A DNA stretch of 64,000 nucleotides, taken from assembly GCA_964106915.2 (NCBI GenBank), contig OZ066916.1; one strand, written 5' to 3'. The DNA comes from Podarcis gaigeae. Its lineage: Eukaryota. The first letter of the stretch is position 1. The number at the start of each line of letters is the position of its first letter. Positions 3,391 to 37,900 of this stretch are shown here, one piece after another. A model generated the notes under the pieces. The model ran no database searches and was not told the origin of the DNA. It saw only the letters and a program-made list of their open reading frames with translations. The translations under genes were made by a program, and so were the position numbers.

Positions 3391-3723
3391 ATGGCGGGCG
3401 CTGCCGAGAGGAAGAAGCAGGTTCGCTTCGCTCGTCTAGAGGAGGAGGATGAAGGCGGAGGAGGAGGAGGAGGAGGAGGAAGCCGCCGCGAGGCAGAGAG
3501 TGAGTCGATGGCGACAGGAGGGGCGCCTTCGGAGGAGCCACTCGGGGGCTCTGCTGCGCGGCTCGCCCTTCAGCCGCTGGTCGTGGTGGCCGAGGGCGGC
3601 CGAAGAAGCCGGGCTGGAGGCGGCGACAGCGCCGCAAAGCGGGAAGCGGCTGTGGCGGCGGCTCCGCGGCGGGCGCTGAAATGGTGCACTTCGGCGGCTC
3701 TTTGCGCCGCTTTCCTGGGCCTG
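3391..3723 (+). CDS. MFSD4B: MFSD4B coding exon 1 (MAGAAERKKQVRF...LCAAFLGL)
   Basis: gggATGG Kozak context inside the CpG island; donor CTG|GTGAGC; 111 codons, phase 0. An alternative in-frame ATG lies at 3508. Confidence 0.85.
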
Positions 3724-3948
3724 GTGAGCTCACTCAGCGTTTCGGGGGTGGGTGGGTGGTCGTGTGTCACTCAAAGTTTCCAGGGTTTCTTCTCTGGTTG
3801 TCCATGCGAGGCTCCCTCGCAGTGCTGCCGAAGGCCCTCAGACCACGGAGGAGCCGAAGGAACGTCAGGACGGGACTCGGCACGTTCCGGTCCTTGACAC
3901 GGGCAGAAATGCGGCGTCACCGCCAGTAGATGCGTAAAAACAAGTACA

Positions 3949-4006
<58 letters not shown>

Positions 4007-7000
4007 CTGAAAGATAGAGGGATTTGCGGGGCGCCTATCTTCCCTCGGATTTCTCCAAGAAACGAGCAGACGCCTTTTCTTTAATTGAATTATTATTATT
4101 ATTATTATTATTATTTGAATTAGTGCACTGTTCTCCTCAAGTACCGGTACTTGAAATACAGAGCGTTAGCGTGGCCTTCCCAGAGATGTGGATTAGAGTT
4201 CTCACTCACTGCAGCCAAGCGAAGATTTGCAGGTGGTTGTGGCCCAAAACACCTGGAAGGCTCTAGGATGCCGAAGGATAACATGGTGAATGGGCCACTC
4301 CTGTGTAGTTCAGCTGCGGTCCCAAAATAGAAGCCCTCAGTTTGTTAGGTTTAGATCCTGCCTTTTGCCAGGATGGCCTTAAGATAGCTTGCAATATATA
4401 TTTTTAACCATATAAATTAAATAGCTCAGACCAGCACCAGCAGAAAAATTCAGGTAAAAAGGAGAAGTATATTTGTAGGGTCAAAGGATGAAGATCTTGT
4501 TGCCTATTACATGAAACCACCTAGTGGTTTCTGAGGATTTTGAGTCAGGTGTCGCCAATGCATATGCTGATGTTGCTCTCCTGTTTTTGTGGTTAAGGTG
4601 GGAGAGTGGAAGTGCTAAATTGTTGTTTGGTCTTGGTAATGGATTAATAAATTTAAGATCAATCTCAGCAAAATGGAGGTGCTGTTCATAGGTGATTCTT
4701 CTGTCTCAGACATGGTGTTCAACCTATTAAAGGTGGGGTTTTATGTCTAGCATGTAGTTTCTTAAAGTCGCATCATTTTGGTTAGAGTGGCTCCTCTTGC
4801 ACTGAAATAATCTGTGCTCTGGTAATCACAATGTACTTGCTGATTTTGATGATTATATGGAAACCACAGTTAGTTCACAATATAGCTGTTTGGGATGGTT
4901 TCATGAGCATTTAATTGATCTTAAAACTGCTTTTGATCTTATTCCTAAAAAAAATTAATGGGAGAATAAATATTTGTATTCTGTGGATAAGATAATTCTT
5001 TTAAAATTTGAATTGCAAGTAATAATCTCCCATTATCCCATGAATATAAGTTGCTCTTACTTCTGGATAAGTGTGCTTAGGATTGCAAGGAGTGGTTGTC
5101 ACCTACTGACTTGTTTTTATTTTTTATCTCAAGTTTATTAATAACAGAAAGTATGTTTGATTTTCACTTCACATTGATATTTATTTATTTCCAGGGTATG
5201 GCCATTGCTATCCTAGGCCCCACATTTGAAGACCTGGCTGCAAATGTGAACAAAAATGTCAGTCAAATTTCTTATATTTTTGTGGGCCGTTCATCGGGGT
5301 ACTTTGGTGGTTCTCTGATTGGTGGTATACTTTTTGATTGCATGAATGCCCAACTTCTCTTGGGTAAGTACACAGGGAATAATACTGATTTTTATATCAT
5401 TGCCCTGATTCACAAAAGTTGGATGGGCAATTGCATAGTCAAAAACGTAAGGGCACAAATATGTATGTCACAAGCTGTGCATGCAGTCCAACCTGAGGGG
5501 AAATGGAGCGGATTAAGTTTCTCTCGCTCCCACAGCCCATTTCCCAGGCTGTTTGATACTTTCTTTGCACCGTTGAAGCAAGTCATTCAGTTTTTTAAAA
5601 ATGGCTTGACTCTTCAGCAGTGAGAATTCAATGGAATTCAGCTTTATGGGTAGCTTCCTTGCATGTTAATAACTTTTTTTAGATTGCTGCTTCAATATGC
5701 AATCAACCTTTTGGCGTCTTAAGACTTTAGTACTATTCCCACTTACCTGGGAGAAACACGCACTGGTAGACAAGTATATGTCTAAGGAGACATGTTTAAG
5801 ATTATACTGCATGCATGCTTTTGATGTCTGAATGTAAAACTAGCATACAGGGTATTTTGTGTGACTAATGTCTTATGTTTATTACTTAAATCTAATTTAA
5901 ATATTTTCCAGGAATAAAAAAATTCCAGAATAAACTTAGATTTGAAATTATTATAAATTGTAGCTTTTAAAAAGTGCAATATGAAATGGTGTGTTTAATT
6001 ATTTCTCCCTTATAGGATTTTCTATGCTGGGTACAGCCCTGGGTCTTTATGTCATCCCCTGGTGCAATAAAGCACTTCTGTTAACATTCATGATGTCTGT
6101 CATTGGGTTTGCAATGGGAGTCCTTGATACAGGTAATAAAACCACAACACTTGTTTCATGATATTCATCCTGTTTGGAATGATTCAGTTAGGATTATGTT
6201 GAATCTCTTAATTTAAAATGGCTTACAATTTTTAAATCAGGAAAGTGAAGAGAGATGCTCACTTTGAAGAAAACTACTGCTTTAGTGGTTATGGAAGGGG
6301 TAAGAGATACCATGTGGAGGAAGATGGAGTGTGCACAGTGTTGAAGAAGCTATGGTGCTGATCAAACAGATGAGGCAGCAAAGAGCTTAGAGACAGAACA
6401 GTTTCTATTGAAGATCAAGAGAGTATCCAAGGCAGTGAATGGGGTCGTTAATTCAAAGGTGAAGGTCAAAGGAACACAGCAGAGGTGGTGTTAGAAACTC
6501 AGATATATAAGATAGGAGCCAAAAGGCTTCTTAAACCAAGATTGCAGTCACCAAAACAGAATGTCTAGTTGCCACTTTGGGGCAATACTACTCTTAAGGT
6601 CTTATTTTCAAATGAAGGTCTGACTGATTGATTCTCAGTTAAACATCTGGCTAGTTCAGATGACAGCCTTGAGCTAGGTTAATAATATTTTGAGACCCTA
6701 AAGAAGAAAAGCCACTTGATTCAGGGACAGTTCATATATATATTGGCCTATTCTGACCTCTTTTTCTTAATACAGACCATTCATAATGTAGGAATATTTT
6801 TCACAACTGCGAGCAGGCCAGTGGGGTAGGGTAAGTGAAGACAAGCTACAACAATTAACTATAACATCCTTCACTGCTCCTGCTGCACAGAAAAAGCATT
6901 TTGGTTGTCATGTATATTAAAGGAGATGGATGGGAATATTGTCAAATAGGAAGAAGGTGAGCCAAGGATTTTGATCTGAAATGATTATTGAGAAAGATCA

Positions 7001-10000
7001 AGGAGTGATAAAGGGAAGCAGAATGGAGTGGTAATGGAGAACAGTATCATTACAGAAGTATGGATTTTGGAGGTTGAAAAACAGTGAGATGGGTGTGGTT
7101 GTGGTCAGGCTCTGCGATTAGCAGGGAGAAGGTCAGTGCTAATGCAGCCACAGGAAAGAAGTGACCGCCAGAAGGAGAGACCACTGAAGGAGAGGGCAGC
7201 AGCAGTGTCAATGCTGGTGGTAGAGAGTCAGATTTTGGTGAGTGCAAGTTGCTGGAGGGTTTAAGAGAAGAAAGGATTGTGAAAGATCAATGATTTCTTA
7301 GTGAGGGAGCAGCAGTTCCAGAGGAAGCATGAAAATAGGAGTGGGGAGCAGTGAATGGGAGACGGCAAGTGAATGCCACAACGCTGGAGGAAGCCATTAG
7401 AGCTCTGGAGCCAAGAAAAGGCTCTGAAGGAGAAATGGAAAATGATATTGGTAGAGCAGTGAGGGTCATAAAATGCATCTCTGGCAGGTAATCTTGTTGT
7501 CTTCAATGATGGGTTGTTTCTGTGGTGTAATGCTGGTAAGAGGGTCAAGCAGGTGTGATATCTTGCCTAGTAATGTATCTGCATCTTTCTGTTGCAAACA
7601 TAGTGCTTTCCTTTGAAAAAGAAGTTTAGTCCTCAGTAGCACTTGGAGCCAAGGAAGAAAGAAGACTGTCAAGACAACAGGGTTGTTGTTTTTTATGCTG
7701 GCTGGACTGTGCACTTGTTAAACAATTTCTTAAGGGAGTCATTTTAATGATTGATTTTAATGTTTTTATATTGCTGTACACCGCCCTGGTATTTTACGAG
7801 AGTATGGGATATAAATCCTTATCAGTAAGCAAACCTTTGATCTTTGAAGTGTCACTGTCAAGCTAGAGGAAACTTTCTGTGTTTCTGTGAATAGAGGCCG
7901 TTGAACCACCTCCTGCTATTTATTCATAATATTATCAAAACTGTGTTTTCAGCAGGAACCGTTTGATAACAATTACAGAATTTTATGGGAATGTTCACTT
8001 AGTTATTGAAATAATTGTGAAGCTTTATAGTTGACATTGAATATGCTCTGTTAAATTGACCTCATTCTGCATACTGGTGAGCAGATGGATTCCATTTAAT
8101 TAAGATACTAAACATATTATTGCATATAGTGCTTGTCACTTGAGAGAACCTGGGTTCTGCCTGTTGAGAATTTTGAAGGAACTCCTTTCTGTCTTACCTC
8201 TTATGCTCTCCTCCTCTGTGCTTAATCAATTGGGGGAGGGGTTCATTCACCAACTGGCATGACCTGCATACAGCTGCCAGTTGTCGTCCCCCTGAACCTC
8301 CCCCTCACCTGTGATCACTGAGTGAAAGTATGATGTAGGGCTTTGCATGTGTGATTGGGGAACCAGGGTTATCCTAGTTGCCCTAATCATTTGTTCAGGC
8401 CCTGTGTGTTTACAGTTGAATGTGCACAGGGCCCACCAGCAGGGTGGGATTCAGTAGCTACAAGCTTTTCACACACTGAATATGGATTGGGAGTGTGAGA
8501 AGAGGGCTTTCAGGAAGACTTGTGGGGATGGAGGAGCTGCTAGTCTACTGCTTTTCGTCACTTCTTCCCCCCTCAACTCATGAGTAGGGGGGCTCCTTGT
8601 AGCTCTTCAGGTGCAGCTGGTTGCTAGTTCTCATCTCTGAATACTGGCCCTAGTGACTGTGGCTGATGGGAATTTAAGTCAAGCAGCAACTGGAGGTTCC
8701 CACCCTGGGAAAGTACACTGGGAACTGAAAACAGGCTAACTAGCCACAGCTCCCCCTTTTCTTTCGTTCGGCTGTAATCCCTTCTAGTTACCTGTGCCTG
8801 TTGATGAGGGAGCCTTCAGAGTTCTCAGCAGGTGGAGTGAGGTTGCTCTTGAGTGATGATGTAAGGTTCCAAGAAACCAGTCTGAATATGGAAACTATAC
8901 CCTGTATATTTTCTTTACCCCACAGGTGGCAATGTTCTTGCCTTGGACACATGGGGAGAAGAAGCCGGTCCGCATATGCAGGCCTTACACTTCAGTTTTG
9001 CTCTGGGTGCTTTTGTGGCTCCCATCCTGGCCAAGATGGCGCTAGGTGGCTCCGCTATTGGTTCTCCGGTTCTGTTGGGTGGTAATGTTGACAATCAGTC
9101 TGCCGTGAATTCTCTTCCTGCTGCTACACCAGTCCTGAAACTGCATTTAAACTTGAACTTTATGTGGTCTTATGTTGTTATAGGCAGTTATCTTTTGCTT
9201 GTTGCATTGTTTTTCCTTGTTTTGTGTTTGAAGAGCAGTCCCGTCCGCGACAGGACAAAGTTTTCCACACAGAAATACCAGATTGCTAAATACCACCGTG
9301 CCGTCATATGTCTCCTCTCTGTGTTCTTTTTCTGGTATGTAGGGGCAGAGGTCACTTATGGTTCTTACATTTTTACTTATGCAAAAACCTTCGCTGCCAT
9401 GAAGGAACATGAAGCAGCTGGGTTGAATTCCCTCTTTTGGGGATCATTTGCAGCTTGCAGGGGACTGGCAATCTGTTTTGCTGCTTGCTCTTACCCTGGA
9501 ACTATGATCCTTCTGAGTATCATAGGCTCCACTCTGTCATGCCTATTCCTGGCACTGTTCAGTACATACCCAGTCTCTCTGTGGCTTGGCTCTGCAGTAT
9601 ATGGAGCATCCATGGCGACTATCTTCCCTAGCGGCATTTCCTGGATTGAGCAGTATACAACCATCCATGGGAAATCTGCAGCATTATTTGTAATGGGTGC
9701 AGCTCTGGGGGAAATGTGTATTCCTGCAGTGGTTGGCTACCTTCAAGGACATTTCCCTGCTATCCCTGTGCTCATGTATTCTGCGTTGGGAGCAGCAGCC
9801 ATGACATCAGTGCTGTTCCCCGTGATGTATAAATTAGCTACATCACCCTTCGATGCTAAACTGAAGGATGTGGGGGATGGTGAGCTCCAGGAAGCCTTAT
9901 TGTCCCATTCTCATCTTGAGGATGATGATGATGACGACGGCAGAGAATGGAATGAAGTAGACTTTGAAGTAATTGAGATGAATGACACTATGAGGAACTC

Positions 10001-10142
10001 TGTCATAGAAACATCCAAGACGATCGAAGGGGAATCGACACCTGCCACCTCTGCTCATCCTTCTTCAAGAAACATTTTTAATTCTTCTCCTCGGCTTACT
10101 GTCGGCTCCCCAAAACATAAGAATTCTAGTAAGAATGACTAA
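3391..10142 (+). CDS. MFSD4B: MFSD4B (SLC60A2 / KIAA1919 / NAGLT1-like) major facilitator superfamily transporter, 611 aa; join(3391..3723,5195..5363,6016..6132,8926..10142)
   Basis: Four exons with GT-AG sites join in frame (333+169+117+1217=1836 nt). Translation LCAAFLGL-GMAIAILGPTFEDLA...GVLDTGGNVLALDTWGEEAGPHMQALHFSFALGAFVAP matches the MFSD4B family as I recall it. Tail-to-tail position next to REV3L fits known amniote synteny. Confidence 0.93.
3952..4006. repeat. Compound (GT)n(GA)n microsatellite in MFSD4B intron 1
   Basis: Read directly; (TTA)n follows at 4089-4115. Confidence 0.95.
5195..5363 (+). CDS. MFSD4B: MFSD4B coding exon 2
   Basis: tttccag|GGTATG...TTGG|gtaagt; GMAIAILGPTFEDLAANV...QLLL. 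Confidence 0.95.
6016..6132 (+). CDS. MFSD4B: MFSD4B coding exon 3 (absent from the ORF track)
   Basis: cccttatag|GATTT...ACAG|gtaata; (G)FSMLGTALGLYVIPWCNKALLLTFMMSVIGFAMGVLDT(G); phase 1-1. Confidence 0.94.
8926..10142 (+). CDS. MFSD4B: MFSD4B terminal coding exon 4
   Basis: ccccacag|GTGGCAAT; continues into ORF 8943..10142 with several TM helices and an acidic cytosolic tail; TAA at 10140-10142. Confidence 0.96.
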
Positions 10143-28900: not shown

Positions 28901-31900
28901 TATCCGTAATCCATGCACTAGAAGAACCAGAAATGTTCATTATTTTGTGTTTTTAAAATCTTTGCCCTTACAGCTTACCATATTTTTCTGTGTATAACAT
29001 GACCCCATGTATAAGACAACCCCTATTTTTGGGAGCCCTCAACAGTTGTTTAGCTTCTTTTGTAAGTTTGCTGAGCTGTTGAGCAGCTTTTCGACGATCC
29101 CCTGCTCTGGCTGATGGGACTGGTGCCGCAATACACCGCATACTGGCACTCACCAGATACTCTTCCTAAGCCAGGAAGAGCGGGGAAGCAGTCTCCTCTC
29201 CGACATTTCCCTGTCACCGCTGTAGCACCAGCCCTTGCTTACTTAGCATATTAACCCGTGTATAAGACGAGCCTCAATTTATCACAAAAAATTCAAAAAA
29301 GGTCGTCTTATACATGGAAAAGTAGAGTACTTACTTTTTATCATATTCCAAGGTTTCATCACTCATATAAATTGTCCAGAAGCAGCATCCACGGCACTAC
29401 TCATGGCTTGCATGTCACTTCAAACCATAGCTAACCTTAACCATAGTTAAGTGAAAGCTGGGGCTATGGGCTGGAATTGTGGGCACTTTACTTCTTCCTC
29501 ATTCCCGCTGCTATGTTGCCAAGAGCAAAGCCATGGTTTGGTTTAATGTTACGGATGAACCTGGGCTTCTCTCTCCCCCCAAAGAAACCACAAGCTAAAT
29601 GCTACTCCCTCCACCGCTAGGTTTGTTTGTTTGTTTGGAGGGAACAAACCATGAGCCCACAGATGGGCGGGGTTATAAATAATAAATTAAATGATGATGA
29701 TGATGATGATGTAAAACTAACCCAGACCATGGCTTAGCTATCAGCAGCAGGAAAAGAGCAAAGTGCCTGTGATTTTAGCCATGTGCACCAGCACACTGTA
29801 CCCTTGAAATTACAACTAAGCTTAACTATGATTTTAAGTAGTGAGGGGGAACCCTCACATGGGCCTAGTTAGGCCCATCAGGATTACCCATTTGGCCCGT
29901 GAAGCCACCTTCTACACACAGCCACCTGCCCTACACCTCATATATGATGTTGGGGCGGGGGGTGGGATAAAGTTGCAGCTCCCTGCTGAAAGTGGGGTTT
30001 GAAGGTACTGAAGATCAGCTGTCCCAGCAAAGCCCTGTGCCTCTGCAAGCCCTGATTATCATGCTGATGCTTGCAAAGACATAGGGCTTTGTGACTACCA
30101 ACAACCAGCTAACCATTGGAGCCTGCAAAGTGTGCCTTTACCCATTCTTTCTTAATTCAAATTGTGTGATCAAAGGAAAATGGATTGCCTGATGTCACTG
30201 GGACATCAGGTGATTGATAGGTGGGCAGGCAAAGTATGACTCCAACCCATTGGTTGGATTCAGTTCCACACCCTAGGTTTAAAGTAGTGTGTGAAGAAGA
30301 CCACAGTTCTATATGGTTTCCATTATGCAAACTGGTTTATATTTAGTCACTCTTCCTCAGGTTCTTATTTTGTGGACACTCTACACAGGATATGGCTCTC
30401 CCACTGTTCATTGCAGTGACTCAGGTACTCAAATGCTTCTCCCTTGGCTAGCTGCTTCATCTATTTCTGCTCCCATCTCTTCAAACAAAAGATAAACAAC
30501 CACTACTCTAATACAGAAAACTGAAAGAAGGATCCTTGCTAGCTGACTGAACAGAATGCATGTAGTCAAGCTTCCTAGTGAGAGACAGTGAAAAACACTA
30601 AAATTGGAACAGTAACACCGTATTTTTCCATGTATAAGATGCCCCCATGTATAAGACGACCCTTATTTTTTGGAACCCCAGATTAAGAAAAATGAAACCC
30701 TAAAATAGAAGTGAAAATCTGGATGATTGATGGTGGCATGTTGTTGATCTTTTTGGGGGCAATTGCCCTCAAAGTTTCCAGCATGAGGTGCATGCAGTGC
30801 ACTGTGGTGCAGAAGCAAAGGCAGTGACTGCAGAAGCAGGCTCCCAAGCAGGATGCCAAGGAAGAACCGGGGAAGGCAGGGGGGGAAGCAGCCGGAAGGA
30901 CCGCCTCAGCCCGCCCAAGCCAAACATATGCTTAAATATTTTAAATATTTTAAAAATTCCCCCAGATGCCCATGTTCTGTGTAAAAGACAACCACCAGTT
31001 TTTAACTATTTTTTTTATAGCAAAACACCTCATCTTATATACAAAAAAATTGGTACTAATGGCTTTATACCTGGAATAATAGTAGAATAAAACCACGGCT
31101 TCTCACAATTATTAATAACTTTAGAATTAGGAACCTTAGAATCATAAACACACCTGGAACACGTGAGACCATTTGGCATAAATCAACACCTAGAGCAGCA
31201 GCTCTCTGCAAGAGGTATCCCCAGGAATGCATCTGAACTTCATAGCCCAGCAAAATATCTGGATCATACCTAAAAAGAGAACACACATTTTCTTCATAGA
31301 ACCATGTGCTCTTTTTTGTTTCAGCAAACCTACTCAGACATGTAATTTTAGCATTTCACGTCAACTAAAAGTTATGCTTTTAAAAATTACTCATTTTTTC
31401 TATTTTACCATCTTATGTCGTTTGTTTTTAATGTTTGCTTTTACAGGTATTTTTAATGGATGTTTTATATTTTGTTGTAAACTGCTTAGAGGACATTGTT
31501 GTTCTAGTATGCAGTATATAAACTCTGTTAAATAAATAAAATAATAAACTCAACAAATTTATACTGAATTTAATGCCAGCAGCCTAATATAAACATGAAG
31601 TCTTGCTTGAGTAAAGAAGGAAGAACATACCGTGAGTCAGAAAACACAATCTACACAAAAAAAAAGGTACTGAGTATGCAAAAGTCTGCCACGTGGATGG
31701 GGCTACGGAGAAAAACTGAACACATTTAATTACAAATAACAAAAATTCCGTATTTATCCCCATGTGGAAACTTGTACCCAAGTGTAAGCATGAAGTGCCA
31801 TGTATCCATAGTTGTGTATATCATTCCCTTGGTGCTTTCTCTGGATTAGGTCTAACATGTATATTTTCGTAATGACAATTTTGGAAATACAAGCAATTAA

Positions 31901-34900
31901 CCACAAATAACTGGTGGAGAATTCCCTTCTAGTTCCCATGGGGAGGGGAGAGGCTGGGATCCAAAGAGCCAGTTTAGGTATGTATGGTGACATGTTGTTA
32001 CTTTTAAAACAGCAGGTCCTTATGCCATGTCATAAGGTCCATGTTTGAAACTCCCAGTGTCCCCTGGAAGGTTGCTGTGTGATACATAATTATTTTGAAC
32101 TTAGCTAGTAAATACTTTGCCTGCTTTAGATGTGACGCAATATGCTGGTTCAAATGCCAGTAACACTCATACAGAGGCTGCATTTGAAAGAGAATTGGTA
32201 TCTCCATACAAGGGCCGTTTATACTTTTTGTGACTTGTGTGATCGGGGCACTTCAAAAAAGCACTGCAGTAACCATATGAATCATGGTAGCCAGTGCTTT
32301 TTTCTTTAAAAAAAATGTTTGGGGGTACTCTCATTATCCTACTCATATTGAAATACTGCCCCTCAATGAGGCCAAACTTAGATTCACAAAATGTTTAGGG
32401 GTATGCATACCCCTGCGTACCCCCAGAAAAAAGCACTGACAGTTGCCATGTAGAAAACCACCACTTGGAAGCTCTAATTCTCACAAGTAATACTTATAGT
32501 GAGTTCTCAATGACTTAAATTCAAATGAGAAGAGAAAATATCACCATGTTTGAGGAATCTGTAATGTTTCACATAAGTAGGGAAAAATTATAGTAGAGTT
32601 ACATTGTCCAGTTGGCAGAGATAATGTGGGATTTAGATTCACTGAGAGTATTAATGTTTTGCTTTATATTTTTGTGAGCTGCTTAGAGGCTCTCTTACAA
32701 TCAAGCAGTATATAAGTGTTGTACTGTATCAAGACTGCTGCTTGGAGCCCATATGACTGAATGTTTGTCCATACAAAATATTTCCTTCACAGAGAAAGCA
32801 AGACCCAGGTACAGCATTACAAGCTCAGTGAGAATGACGCCCAAGTTATATACATCACTGCAGGAAAAATGTACACATTTCACCATAAAGCAGGAGCAAT
32901 TCCTTAGCTCCCTCTGCAAAAGTAACATGCTCTATAGAAAGCTTCATTTGCTATAATTTCATGCTTATCCTTCAAACTGCATTGTCTTATAAAATGATGA
33001 CACACAACCAGGTAAATTCTGCACACGCAGCAAGGCTTCAAAGGCTCTATTTACAGAAAAAGCCTAGACAATGTACTTCAGAAGCAGCCTCCAACATTGC
33101 ACTAGAACCTGCTGCCATGTAATACTGTGGCTCTTTGAATTATGGTAAGTATCTAAAAATGTTAATCCATAAAACTTTGCTTAACACGTCAGATTTCTAT
33201 GCCTCCTTGTGAGCAGAGGTGAGACACTCTGGACATTGGTTCTGCGTGATGTGCATATGCTGCCCTTGCTCAGTATTTTAACGAAGAGTGATTTTCCTTT
33301 TCACTTTTTCAGCACTCTGAGCCTAAACCATGTAGCTTCCCAGCCAAAATCTTATGATTGATAGACTGAGGAATGCCTTTAGTTTAGTTGTTACATACTA
33401 ATTTCTTCGATGGTTTTCTAATCTGTTATGGCTCAGGCCAACCCACCCACTATTCAAAGTATAGTCTTTGTACCCAGTAGTGGATTGGGATGGGCAGCAG
33501 ATCAGTGGCCTCCTTAGCCTGTCCACTGTTGCCAACATTCTTCTGGCTGGCCACTGCTGTTGTCTGAAACTTCAGCAGAACTGCTACAACTTTGCTGTTA
33601 TAGTGGTCCTAAAGGGCTCTCTAGGTCATCTATATCTCTATCTGCAGAAGGGTTCTTCCTCAAGAGTGGGCATTGTGGACGCTTCTTTAAAGTTTCAGAG
33701 TTTACTGCTAAAAAACTTTAAACAGTCCTTGCTGCCATAAAGTGGCAGCAATGCAGACATTATCCAGGGCCACCTTGCTTCAAGGAAGGGTGTGTGTGTG
33801 TGTGTTTAAAAGAACATAGTCAACATACTTTGATTCCTTAAAAATACCCCCAAAAACATTTCCCCCATCTAGAACTGCTTGGTGTTTTAAAATGAAAATG
33901 TGGGTTATTATTATTTGACTTAAAAGGCAAAAGGGCACCCAACAGATTCTGTTGTGAAAGCTTTGTTCTATACTTCACAGACTCTTGTGCTTTCACTAAG
34001 TAGTGTACCACAGACCCAGTAGGTTATTTCTCTCTCTCTTTTTCCCCTGCATTCTTCTACAGTAGGTTTGGACAAACTGGCCATGCTGACTTGAGCTGTT
34101 AAGAGTTGGAGACAATTGACATCTGGAGGGCCAGTGGTCAGGGATGATGGGAGTTGTACTCTAATAACATTTAGAGTGCCATAGGTTAGCCACCTCTGTT
34201 CTACAGGTTATATTCCTTTTCATTTCAGAAGAGAGAATACTTTTCTAAATTGCACAGTTTAGACAAAAAGGAACTGTAGGACATTCAAACATATAAAAAT
34301 TATTTGGTAAGGCTTATCCATTAGTAACATTAGGGAATATTGGATTTCTCAAAACATTTTTTCAGGTCATTTGTACTATTAAAAAATAGAAGTTTCTTCT
34401 AGGAAATAATTTGGTTCTTTTTGTAAAAGTTCTCATTTCTGAATTAACTCAACAGGCTTTTAAGAAATTATAACAGAGACATCATTATCTTCAGTTTTAC
34501 TTTAATGTAGCCAGAAAAATCTACAGCAGCAGCTTCCATAGCTAAAAGGATGTCACCTACAAATATCACCATTTTATTATAGATACTGCCAACTTGAACT
34601 TGTGAACATAATTTGCTTCTATCCTGAACTTGCTGAAAAGATCTTCAAAGTGAAACTGTGGAGCAATCATAGTTCAGTGGCAAAGCATCTGCTCTGTGTG
34701 CAGAAGTTCCCAGGTTCAACTGCCAGCATCTTCATGAAGCAGGTGACCCTGCCTGACCTGCTAGTGAGCCGGTGCCTGTCAGAGCACTAAATGTCTTGGG
34801 TAGGAGGATCAATAGCCTGACCCTCTACAAAGCAGTTTGCCAAATCCTATGTCACTGAAACCTTGTCAAATCTTGGCCAGGTTAAGTCAATGAGGTTTGT

Positions 34901-37900
34901 ATGGAATCCAAACGACAAATGATATTTGCTGTATTGTTTTGGACTATCCCTAGGTTCAAACAACTGCTGGTCTTATTTGTATGGCTAAGTAGTTGGATTG
35001 AATTCAGCATCAGAATCAATAGCTCCTAAAGAAAAAAATCCACAACATCACAGAAATGTCAAAAAACATTTTCATTTGGATTTTCTCCATTCAGCAGTCT
35101 TTTCAATAAATCAAGTGATGCATAATAATCAGCAACAAAAGCTATTATAGGATTTATGAGTCCAATATAATTATTATTAATGATGAAGGGTAGTATATAA
35201 ATTTAATAAATAAATATAATAGTAACTGGGGGGGAAAGAGGTTAAATTCTTGTCAGCTCTCATAGTGAAATTGAAAACACATTTATTCTGAAGTACGTCA
35301 TTGATTTTACAGAAAGATGTTGCAAAGAATGTGGCCCAAAAGGAATAGTTTAGGTATTAATTGCTGTTCTTCCTGAGACCTCTGTGTTTTATATGAGCAG
35401 TCAATTATATAACTCCCACAGTATCTCCATCATCAAGAAGGTATGGTAAAATTAGTTTGCCCTTTAATCTGGTATTTAAAACAAACAAATGTGAAATTCT
35501 CTTTACCATCAAGGTAAAGAAACAATATTAATAGAAAATTATTTAAAAAGAATGAAAAAGAGCAAATGTCTCTACTGTTCTAAGCTGAGAACTGCCTAAA
35601 AAAAGTCTTGTGTCAACTTTTCTAGAGGGGTTATGAACTGCTATCCTTCAAGGGATAAAAACAGCCTAATCAAAATATTTGAAGGTACACACGATATTCC
35701 ACTTGTTGTACAGACGTTGCAAATAGGCACACAGCACTTCAAAAGCTGTTCCCCAGGTAACTTTGAATGTCCACCACAAATATATTAGAAATTGGTGTGC
35801 TTTCTTCATTCAATAAAGCCTTCAGCAGTTAAGTCTTCAGAAATACAAATAAATTGTACCGATATTCTTTGGCATGGTTTCATGTGGCCAAGTGGCATTT
35901 TCCCCAAATAGTGGAGCACTTTATAGGAAAAATAAAAGTAGCAGGTTGTTACTTCCAAGTTGTTTCCTAAGCCAGACGGAGCAGCGGATTCCCAAAAAAG
36001 AGAAAGAAAAAATTAATTTCCTTACCTGTAATTTTGTCTTCTCTGAACAGGAATCCGCTGCTTCGCCAGGACCCACCCAGTGTTGGTTGCTCTCAGCAAC
36101 TCTTTAGTACTCTGGTTTCCTGGATTTAGTCAATGCCATTCTCATCAGAAGTTTTCTAGTCAGAGAGAGAGAGAATTGCAAATGTACTCTGCCTAGTACA
36201 CATTTTCCTTGAGAATGTATTCCAGCCAGATGTTTCAAAATTTTGTTTCCTTGGTAACATTCAGACTTTGAGGTTTTGGCTATTGACCTGAAGAAAGACA
36301 CACCTGAAGTTCCACAGGCCATGATCAGAGTTTGCTACAAAAACTGGCCAGGAACTTTTCAAACCAGGGGAAAATAAGGACTTTCACATTGAGAGAAGAC
36401 ATGTAAAGAGGCCAGTTTTTATATCTGTTTATGTCTGTACCACTATGAGATATGAGTTTTGCGATAAAGTTCTTTTTTTAAAAAAAAATCTTCCTACTTA
36501 AGACAGTGTATGTTTTAATTTGTATTGCAAGATCATTTAAACCTTAGAGTATTTTCTAATAAACATTGAAATGCAGTTTGGGAATATTAAAACTCCAGCA
36601 AGATTGATGTGAGAGGCCTGTATAAGAGAGACTTGCATAAAGAACCTTATAATATAGATATATCTGTTGTGAGCAGGAAAAACAGACTTTTCCAAGAAAT
36701 CAAAACCATTTAAACATGGGAAGAGAAGGTAGGGAAACTTGGATTTGAAAATGTTTAAATAAAAGTTTCAGAGGATGAAAAAGCAGGGTCTACAGATGCC
36801 CTACCTTTTAACAATGTTCACCACTTCCTGGAAAAGTGCTCTCTCATCAGCAGCATATTTGACTTCCAATCCTGAGATGCCAGATCTGGTAAGCAAAGGT
36901 GCATGTTCTCTGTTACCTGAAAAGCAAATTAAATACTTATTTCTAGTAAAATACCACCGTGTTGTTGTTTTAAATAAAAAACACACATTAAAATTAAGCC
37001 ATGATTTTTCATTGTTCAAGTCCCCTGCCACTACTGCTCATTGCAGACAATGAATAGTTGGTGGAGATTTCGTATTTGAACAAACTGTGGGAAAGCATGC
37101 ACATGCTTTTGTACTTTATAGAGCTCTGATTTAAGTAATTATCTTTTGCTCAAGTGTTTATGACCTTTCATCAGCATAAATGTGGTACAATAAAGTGTGG
37201 CACCTCCCAAGCTTACTTCTAAATTTTGGAGAAAAAGATTTAGCTTTCACCACTCAACAGAGTGATAATAAAGGCTCTGTCCACACATTATGGTAAACCA
37301 TACTCAGTGGTTTACAGGGGAACTTTATTTCAGAAAATGGTTTACCAAGATGTGCAAACCAAGCCAGCCTCATTTGAAATGTGATTCATAAGCAATTTTC
37401 TATATTTTTTTCCAATCAGTTCATGAGAGCTTGGCATTTAATAGCAACTAACAAATAGATGTTTTAAATGAATGCAATTTTCAGCAGTCCTCAGTTTCTA
37501 ATATACTTGATCCAAAGAATGGAAACCTTTTACATCCACAACAGTATGACTACTTATGTTTAATGAACATTATAAGAGCTGTGCTATATCACATTAATCA
37601 TTCTGCAAATAATTTTTAAAAACTTAATATTTTATGCAGACATTTACAACAAGTACAAAATTCTGGTTGCCTCAGGTATTAGATGCATGGGAGGGCATCT
37701 CTTTGAAGTGACACTCAGGCTATGATGGAGAAGATTAAGAGCAGCAGTTGCCAATCACTAAGGTGGCATGGTGGGAAAGGGGTTAACAATGCTAGGATCT
37801 GAGAGAGCTGTTCTGCACTCTACTGCCTGTGCATGGGATAAGTAGGACCACATCCAATATTCAAACTGTCAAAAATGCATTAGTTATTTGATTCAAACAA

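What the first reader, a model, noticed from the sequence alone, without database searches (positions are those of the whole stretch)
35975..36067. Long RNA hairpin that presents the poison-exon 5' splice site in its apical loop
Seen: a perfect 13-bp inverted repeat AGCAGCGGATTCC (35980-35992) / GGAATCCGCTGCT (36050-36062) straddles the candidate donor. In the minus-strand pre-mRNA it extends outward through one A-C mismatch by 4 more pairs (GGCG/CGUC, one G-U). Inward it continues with AGAGAAGA/UCUU(U)CUCU and AAAAUUA/UAAUUUU. The terminal loop is CAG|GUAAGGAAAU, the splice site itself. CpG-containing arms in an AT-rich intron are unlikely by chance. Inference: a structural switch for U1 access, responsive to a helicase, a dsRNA-binding protein, ADAR (A-C mismatch, though the 5' G neighbour is unfavourable) or, in an ectotherm, temperature.
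Basis: partly seen in the sequence, partly recalled or inferred. Interest (0 to 1): 0.8.

Follow-up and report, generated by a model that had tools for sequence, protein, structure and literature searches.

The report
Folded RNA guarding REV3L poison exon
The gene for an error-prone DNA repair polymerase carries a hidden stop exon shared by lizards and birds, whose end folds into a local hairpin in lizards but pairs with distant partners in birds, probably to set how often the message is destroyed.

Summary
The hairpin is real (MFE -44 kcal/mol, z -6) with the donor in its 13-nt loop. It lies in REV3L (DNA polymerase zeta). The donor is used: an RNA-like contig of a close relative splices it to the next coding exon at about a fifth of the skipping junction's depth. 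It ends a 130-nt frame-shifting exon with a stop (36155-36026), 80% identical in birds; the 262-nt exon of scan note s1-692069 has a non-conserved acceptor. The hairpin is 97% identical in a second squamate (flanks about 60%) but weak in birds (z 0 to -1.6), with only one compensatory change. Birds instead have four mutually complementary elements: upstream A, exon end B, downstream C, and D about 3 kb further. A-B and C-D are predicted to win and bury the donor. This lizard keeps a decayed A and no D. Best reading: structure-tuned unproductive splicing, with partners differing between lineages. Direction and trigger are untested; a thermometer and editing at 36063 found no support. No paper on this exon was found; mammals could not be tested.

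The parts
36805..36916 (-). Upstream coding exon of REV3L, ends ..VNIVKR
   Evidence: (joint 36805 to 31269)
36801..36803 (-). In-frame TAG at the start of the intron (AAG|GTAG); read-through of this donor stops translation at once
   Evidence: same in L004 and all birds
36348..36401 (-). Decayed remnant of element A (intact in birds, where it pairs with the exon end and donor)
   Evidence: synteny; local alignment p about 0.007-0.05
36336..36423 (-). Window-only stem (arms 36410-36423 and 36336-36349) enclosing the A remnant; not kept in L004
   Evidence: z -2.8
36176..36196 (-). 21-nt block upstream of the pyrimidine tract, invariant in six of seven species (branch-point or protein site, inferred)
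36156..36175 (-). Pyrimidine tract and conserved acceptor AG (36157-36156)
   Evidence: use in RNA not shown directly
36026..36155 (-). 130-nt frame-shifting cassette (poison) exon; 128-130 nt in all species
36104..36106 (-). In-frame TAA of the cassette exon, upstream of the whole polymerase domain
36029..36067 (-). Element B: 5' arm of the hairpin = last 42 nt of the exon, with invariant purine-rich stretch
36016..36028 (-). 13-nt apical loop with the donor CAG|GTAAGG (GT at 36025-36024)
35975..36015 (-). Element C: 3' arm, U-rich then GC-rich
31152..31269 (-). Downstream coding exon (YDPDIL.., exonuclease-like domain), acceptor for both the skipping and the cassette junction

Best explanation
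REV3L has a lizard-and-bird poison exon with a strong donor. Inclusion adds a stop before the polymerase domain, so the mRNA is an NMD target (exon, stop and donor use shown; NMD inferred). RNA pairing keeps its inclusion low and tunable by hiding the exon's last ~45 nt (purine-rich, enhancer-like) and the U-rich tract after the donor (inferred). In birds two long-range duplexes do this: upstream A pairs with B and donor positions +3..+8, and distant D holds C; the rival pairing A-D would leave only a weak B-C hairpin and free the exon. In squamates A has decayed and D is not found, and one strong local hairpin B-C hides both stretches while leaving the donor in a tight loop, which allows leaky inclusion. 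The trigger is most likely kinetic (elongation rate, or proteins binding before the stem forms), not heat melting (inferred).
For: Donor spliced to the next exon in contig X1, depth 6.5 vs 32.1 for skipping; contig has 0 differences over 293 nt where neighbouring intron contigs differ 3-4%. Block 36243-35964 about 80% identical to birds, as high as the coding exon. Exon 128-130 nt, never a multiple of 3, both splice sites conserved. Hairpin 96/99 identical between two squamates, flanks 58-63%. Bird duplex energies A-B -47 to -55, C-D -46 to -49, A-D -45 to -62, B-C -19 to -26; B pairs upstream 0.74-0.80 and donor P(unpaired) falls to 0.23-0.42; RNAalifold of five birds gives A-B. D is a conserved island (0.89 invariant vs 0.68 background). 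Opening the purine stretch in the lizard hairpin costs about 7 kcal/mol, the inner helix about 5.
Against: No experiment on structure or inclusion. Covariation is weak for B-C and absent for A-B, whose pairs are mostly invariant. Only two squamates and five birds. Use of the acceptor at 36155 was not seen; the X1 contig runs on unspliced to 36315. Raw-read support is 2-3 reads. The direction (repressing vs exposing) is my inference.
Confidence: 0.55

Rival explanations
1. The hairpin is the permissive state: B-C displays the donor for U1, A and D are repressors that undo it in birds, and squamates are fixed in the displaying state (closest to the first reader's view).
For: Donor P(unpaired) 0.91 in both squamates vs 0.23-0.42 in birds; the inner helix is 98.8% paired across all species; the donor is used in lizard RNA.
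Against: The same stem buries the exon end and the U-rich tract; an 8-bp U1 helix in a 13-nt loop probably needs the inner helix opened, about 5 kcal/mol; inner-helix pairs never vary, so they say little.
Confidence: 0.2
2. The duplexes are a landing site for a dsRNA enzyme or protein (ADAR editing, or Microprocessor cleavage as in splice-site-overlapping miRNA hairpins), with splicing affected secondarily.
For: 30-45-bp imperfect duplexes with A-C mismatches in both clades; position 36063 is G in birds.
Against: No letter difference in the spliced contig across 36063; no Rfam match (best E about 2-4); the bird hairpin is not stable enough for a miRNA precursor.
Confidence: 0.1
3. The unit acts mainly through intron retention: the 649-nt upstream intron is kept (in-frame TAG at its start) and the site serves as a decoy exon or alternative donor; the sequence is conserved for protein binding and the complementarity is a leftover of old inverted duplications.
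For: X1 contig is spliced at the donor but unspliced through the acceptor to 36315; X5 contig is unspliced across the donor; bird spliced contig L008 reads into the intron; little covariation.
Against: Acceptor and pyrimidine tract are conserved (95.6% between squamates); 16/16 A-B complementarity and the D island persist across birds, which neutral leftovers would not.
Confidence: 0.1
4. RNA thermometer for an ectotherm, or a palindromic MITE.
For: Strong hairpin in squamates and weak in birds; other strong hairpins exist in the window.
Against: Inner-helix pairing changes only 0.91 to 0.88 from 10 to 42 C; motif found only at A, B, C, D in 294 kb; no pile-up of repeat reads here, unlike three other places in this intron.
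Confidence: 0.05

Closest known systems
BRD2 exon 3b / BRD3 exon 5b poison exons controlled by conserved complementary regions (PMC10789245)
   Same: Cryptic conserved poison exon whose inclusion is set by RNA pairing; likely sensitive to elongation rate.
   Different: There the paired regions lie in introns around the exon; here the exon's own 3' end and donor are the hub, and the partner differs between birds and squamates.
ATE1 exons 7a/7b, five elements R1-R5 (PMC7797038)
   Same: Several conserved elements compete for one partner, plus a long-range pairing.
   Different: ATE1 picks between mutually exclusive coding exons; here four mutually complementary copies of one motif surround a single poison exon.
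Local stems at 5' splice sites: SMN2 exon 7 and MAPT exon 10; fibronectin EDA loop-displayed enhancer (review PMC11802352)
   Same: Local structure changes access of U1 or SR proteins.
   Different: SMN2's donor is in the stem and EDA displays an enhancer; the lizard hairpin puts the donor in the loop and the exon end in the stem.
Other REV3L splice variants (mouse Rev3l exon 2 circadian splicing, PMC3446320; an SRSF1-dependent frameshift event, PMC13733691)
   Same: REV3L output is modulated by unproductive splicing.
   Different: The first is a 5' exon; the second paper's main text does not say which exon. Neither describes this exon or structure.

Membership tests
Conserved poison cassette exon (AS-NMD) | Frameshift or stop upstream of later exon junctions | tested here: met
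   TAA at 36106-36104; 128-130 nt in all species; many coding exons follow
Conserved poison cassette exon (AS-NMD) | Both splice sites conserved over long distance | tested here: met
   (two squamates, five birds)
Conserved poison cassette exon (AS-NMD) | Donor used in transcripts | tested here: met
   X1 joint, GT..AG, depth 6.5; one RNA-like contig set
Conserved poison cassette exon (AS-NMD) | Acceptor used in transcripts | tested here: inconclusive
   No junction listed; X23 depth fits 36026-36155 but is 2-3 reads; X1 contig reads through
Conserved poison cassette exon (AS-NMD) | Isoform stabilised on NMD inhibition | not testable with these tools
   needs UPF1 knockdown or cycloheximide
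Structure-controlled splicing (BRD2/3, ATE1 type) | Conserved complementary regions | tested here: met
Structure-controlled splicing (BRD2/3, ATE1 type) | Compensatory covariation | tested here: inconclusive
   B-C: 1 pair, 34/500 shuffles as high; A-B: none; too few species
Structure-controlled splicing (BRD2/3, ATE1 type) | Disrupting and compensatory mutants change and restore inclusion | not testable with these tools
   minigene needed
RNA thermometer | Sharp opening in the physiological range | tested here: not met
   (prediction only)
Site-selective ADAR substrate | A-to-G change in RNA at the mismatch | tested here: inconclusive
   0 differences in X1 contig; contigs drop minor variants; X5 has one unlocated difference
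MITE / palindromic repeat | Many dispersed copies | tested here: not met
   no repeat library was available
Known miRNA or other Rfam family | Match above gathering score | tested here: not met

The most novel reading that the evidence does not exclude
A four-element bistable RNA switch (A-B plus C-D versus A-D plus B-C), with the late-transcribed D acting as an elongation-rate timer, controls DNA polymerase zeta dosage in the reptile-bird ancestor; birds and squamates were then fixed in different conformers (donor buried versus donor looped), a natural experiment in rewiring an RNA structure switch between endotherms and ectotherms.
Probability: 0.25. Interest if true: 0.8.

Novelty: new variant of a known kind. 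Interest (0 to 1): 0.58.

Why it matters
Polymerase zeta makes most damage-induced mutations and is essential, so its dose matters (own knowledge); an undescribed, deeply conserved off-switch in its pre-mRNA gives a concrete handle on that dose, testable in chicken DT40 cells. It is also a compact case in which the same exon end is held by different partners in two lineages, which makes the rules for a donor in a loop versus in a stem directly testable.

Tried and rejected
Acceptor at 36287 (262-nt exon): AG lost in L004, region not conserved in birds. Rfam: nothing. Element D in squamates: no significant alignment (p 0.15-0.31). A remnant in L004: lands at the syntenic place but not significant. 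Bowfin (Amia) intron, about 840 nt: no similarity and no comparable donor. Mammals: the deer intron is an N gap, which I left unfilled; narwhal locus gave no DNA; the metagenome scan gave only a bird and distant eukaryotes. Amphibian and pipefish loci not on record. No turtle, crocodile or tuatara locus was reached. Upstream stem 36336-36423 is not conserved. Nine paper searches found no description of this exon (supplement search). No contig taken for human was met, and no human sequence was used. The large protein search was not used.

Full report
Observation. The minus strand of 35970-36072 folds into one long hairpin, -44.2 kcal/mol, z -6.2, MFE equal to centroid, with CAGGUAAGGAAAU as the loop. 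Strength alone is not decisive: four other loci of similar GC content in the window fold at -41 to -47.

Context. The minus-strand gene is REV3L: its large exon matches named REV3L proteins and downstream exons match DNA_pol_B_exo1 and DNA_pol_B. The host looks like a lizard (inference from 84% identity to unnamed contigs and about 72% to birds). The hairpin lies in the 5535-nt intron between the exon ending at 36805 and the exon starting at 31269.

The donor is used. Laying four runs of a close relative on 31120-37000 gave the skipping junction (depth 32.1 in X1, 30.2 in X5) and, in X1, a GT..AG junction from 36026 to 31269 at depth 6.5. That contig has no difference from the window over 293 nt, whereas other intronic contigs differ by 3-4%. 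It runs on without a junction to 36315, so acceptor use is not shown. Raw reads of X23 give sense-strand depth that fits an exon at 36026-36155, but this is two or three reads. X1 and X5 are RNA by the tool's guess; their exon-exon joints support that.

The exon. The block 36243-35964 is about 80% identical in Pitta, Vidua and three further birds, as much as the neighbouring coding exon. The conserved acceptor is the AG at 36157-36156, behind a pyrimidine tract and a near-invariant 21-nt block; the AG at 36287 proposed in note s1-692069 is lost in the second squamate L004. The exon is 130 nt (128-130 in all species), never a multiple of three, with TAA at 36106-36104. Inclusion would end the protein before the polymerase domain, and many junctions follow, so NMD is expected (established rule, not tested).

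Is the hairpin conserved? Between the two squamates it is 96/99 identical against 58-63% in the flanks; one change turns G-U into A-U. In birds the same local fold is weak, z +0.1 to -1.6. On seven sequences one pair changes on both sides (G-C to A-U), six pairs are broken in all birds, and the inner helix is 98.8% paired but nearly invariant. Covariation therefore neither proves nor excludes the fold.

The larger picture from birds. Self-comparison of bird introns shows four mutually complementary elements, E 1e-6 to 2e-3 within the intron: A about 280 nt upstream of the acceptor, B the exon's 3' end (5' arm), C the 3' arm, and D 2.7-3.1 kb downstream. Duplex energies are A-B -47 to -55, C-D -46 to -49, A-D -45 to -62 and B-C -19 to -26 kcal/mol. 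With A present, B pairs upstream and the donor becomes mostly paired in all five birds, while in both squamates it stays in the loop; RNAalifold agrees. A and D are more conserved than the intron (0.88 and 0.89 invariant versus 0.68), D as an island. The window keeps a decayed A at the syntenic place, 36401-36348 (p about 0.007-0.05), and no D was found. A profile of the motif hits only A, B, C and D in 294 kb, and repeat-derived reads pile up elsewhere in this intron but not here, so a MITE is unlikely. Bowfin lacks the element; mammals could not be tested, and the deer N gap was left alone.

Mechanism. Shown: exon, stop, donor use, sequence constraint, predicted folds. Inferred: every strong duplex hides the same two stretches, the purine-rich exon end and the U-rich tract after the donor, which from general knowledge resemble SR-protein and TIA1 sites. 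I therefore favour damping of a strong donor (U1 duplex -11.5 versus -9.7 for the upstream donor): by two long-range pairings in birds and by one local hairpin in squamates, with leak through the looped donor (0.55). The opposite sign, a hairpin that displays the donor, remains open (0.2). Heat melting is not predicted between 10 and 42 C, and editing at 36063 is not seen in the spliced contig. Which state is ancestral is not known.

Comparison. It works like the structure-controlled poison exons of BRD2 and BRD3 (PMC10789245) and the competing elements of ATE1 (PMC7797038). It differs in that the exon end with its donor is the hub of four complementary copies, and in the change of partner between lineages. 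No paper in the held library describes this exon; that library is incomplete and gene annotations may list it. The scan noted the exon before only on this same window (s1-692069).

Verdict. A real, selected element and a new variant of a known kind; interest 0.58. The limits are few species, thin RNA support and no experiment.

Noticed in passing
window 36803-36801 (-); L008:545-616: The intron starts with an in-frame TAG in both squamates and all birds but not in deer or bowfin; a spliced bird contig reads 68 nt into this intron, hinting at retention.
   Followed up: partly
window 36410-36423 / 36336-36349: 14-bp stem enclosing the decayed element A (z -2.8); not kept in L004.
   Followed up: partly
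L001:25518-25556, L002:14739-14778, L005:12107-12146, L009:12003-12042: Bird element D, a conserved island complementary to C and A; in L009 a C-to-T change in D matches the A in C and A.
   Followed up: yes
L001 about 22040 and 26275 (intron positions 108 and 4342): Other 40-nt windows 95% invariant among four birds in the same intron.
   Followed up: no
window 53740-53641, 40960-40861, 23130-23031, 59340-59241: Other strong predicted hairpins (-41 to -47 kcal/mol) in REV3L introns, probably repeat-derived.
   Followed up: no
window 32302-32440, 34127-34170, 35184-35200: Fragments of transcribed repeats in the same intron; reads from elsewhere pile up there.
   Followed up: no
window 3391-10142 (+): Major facilitator superfamily gene (probably MFSD4B, from my knowledge of synteny) facing REV3L tail to tail; its last exon is one 399-aa ORF.
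   Followed up: partly
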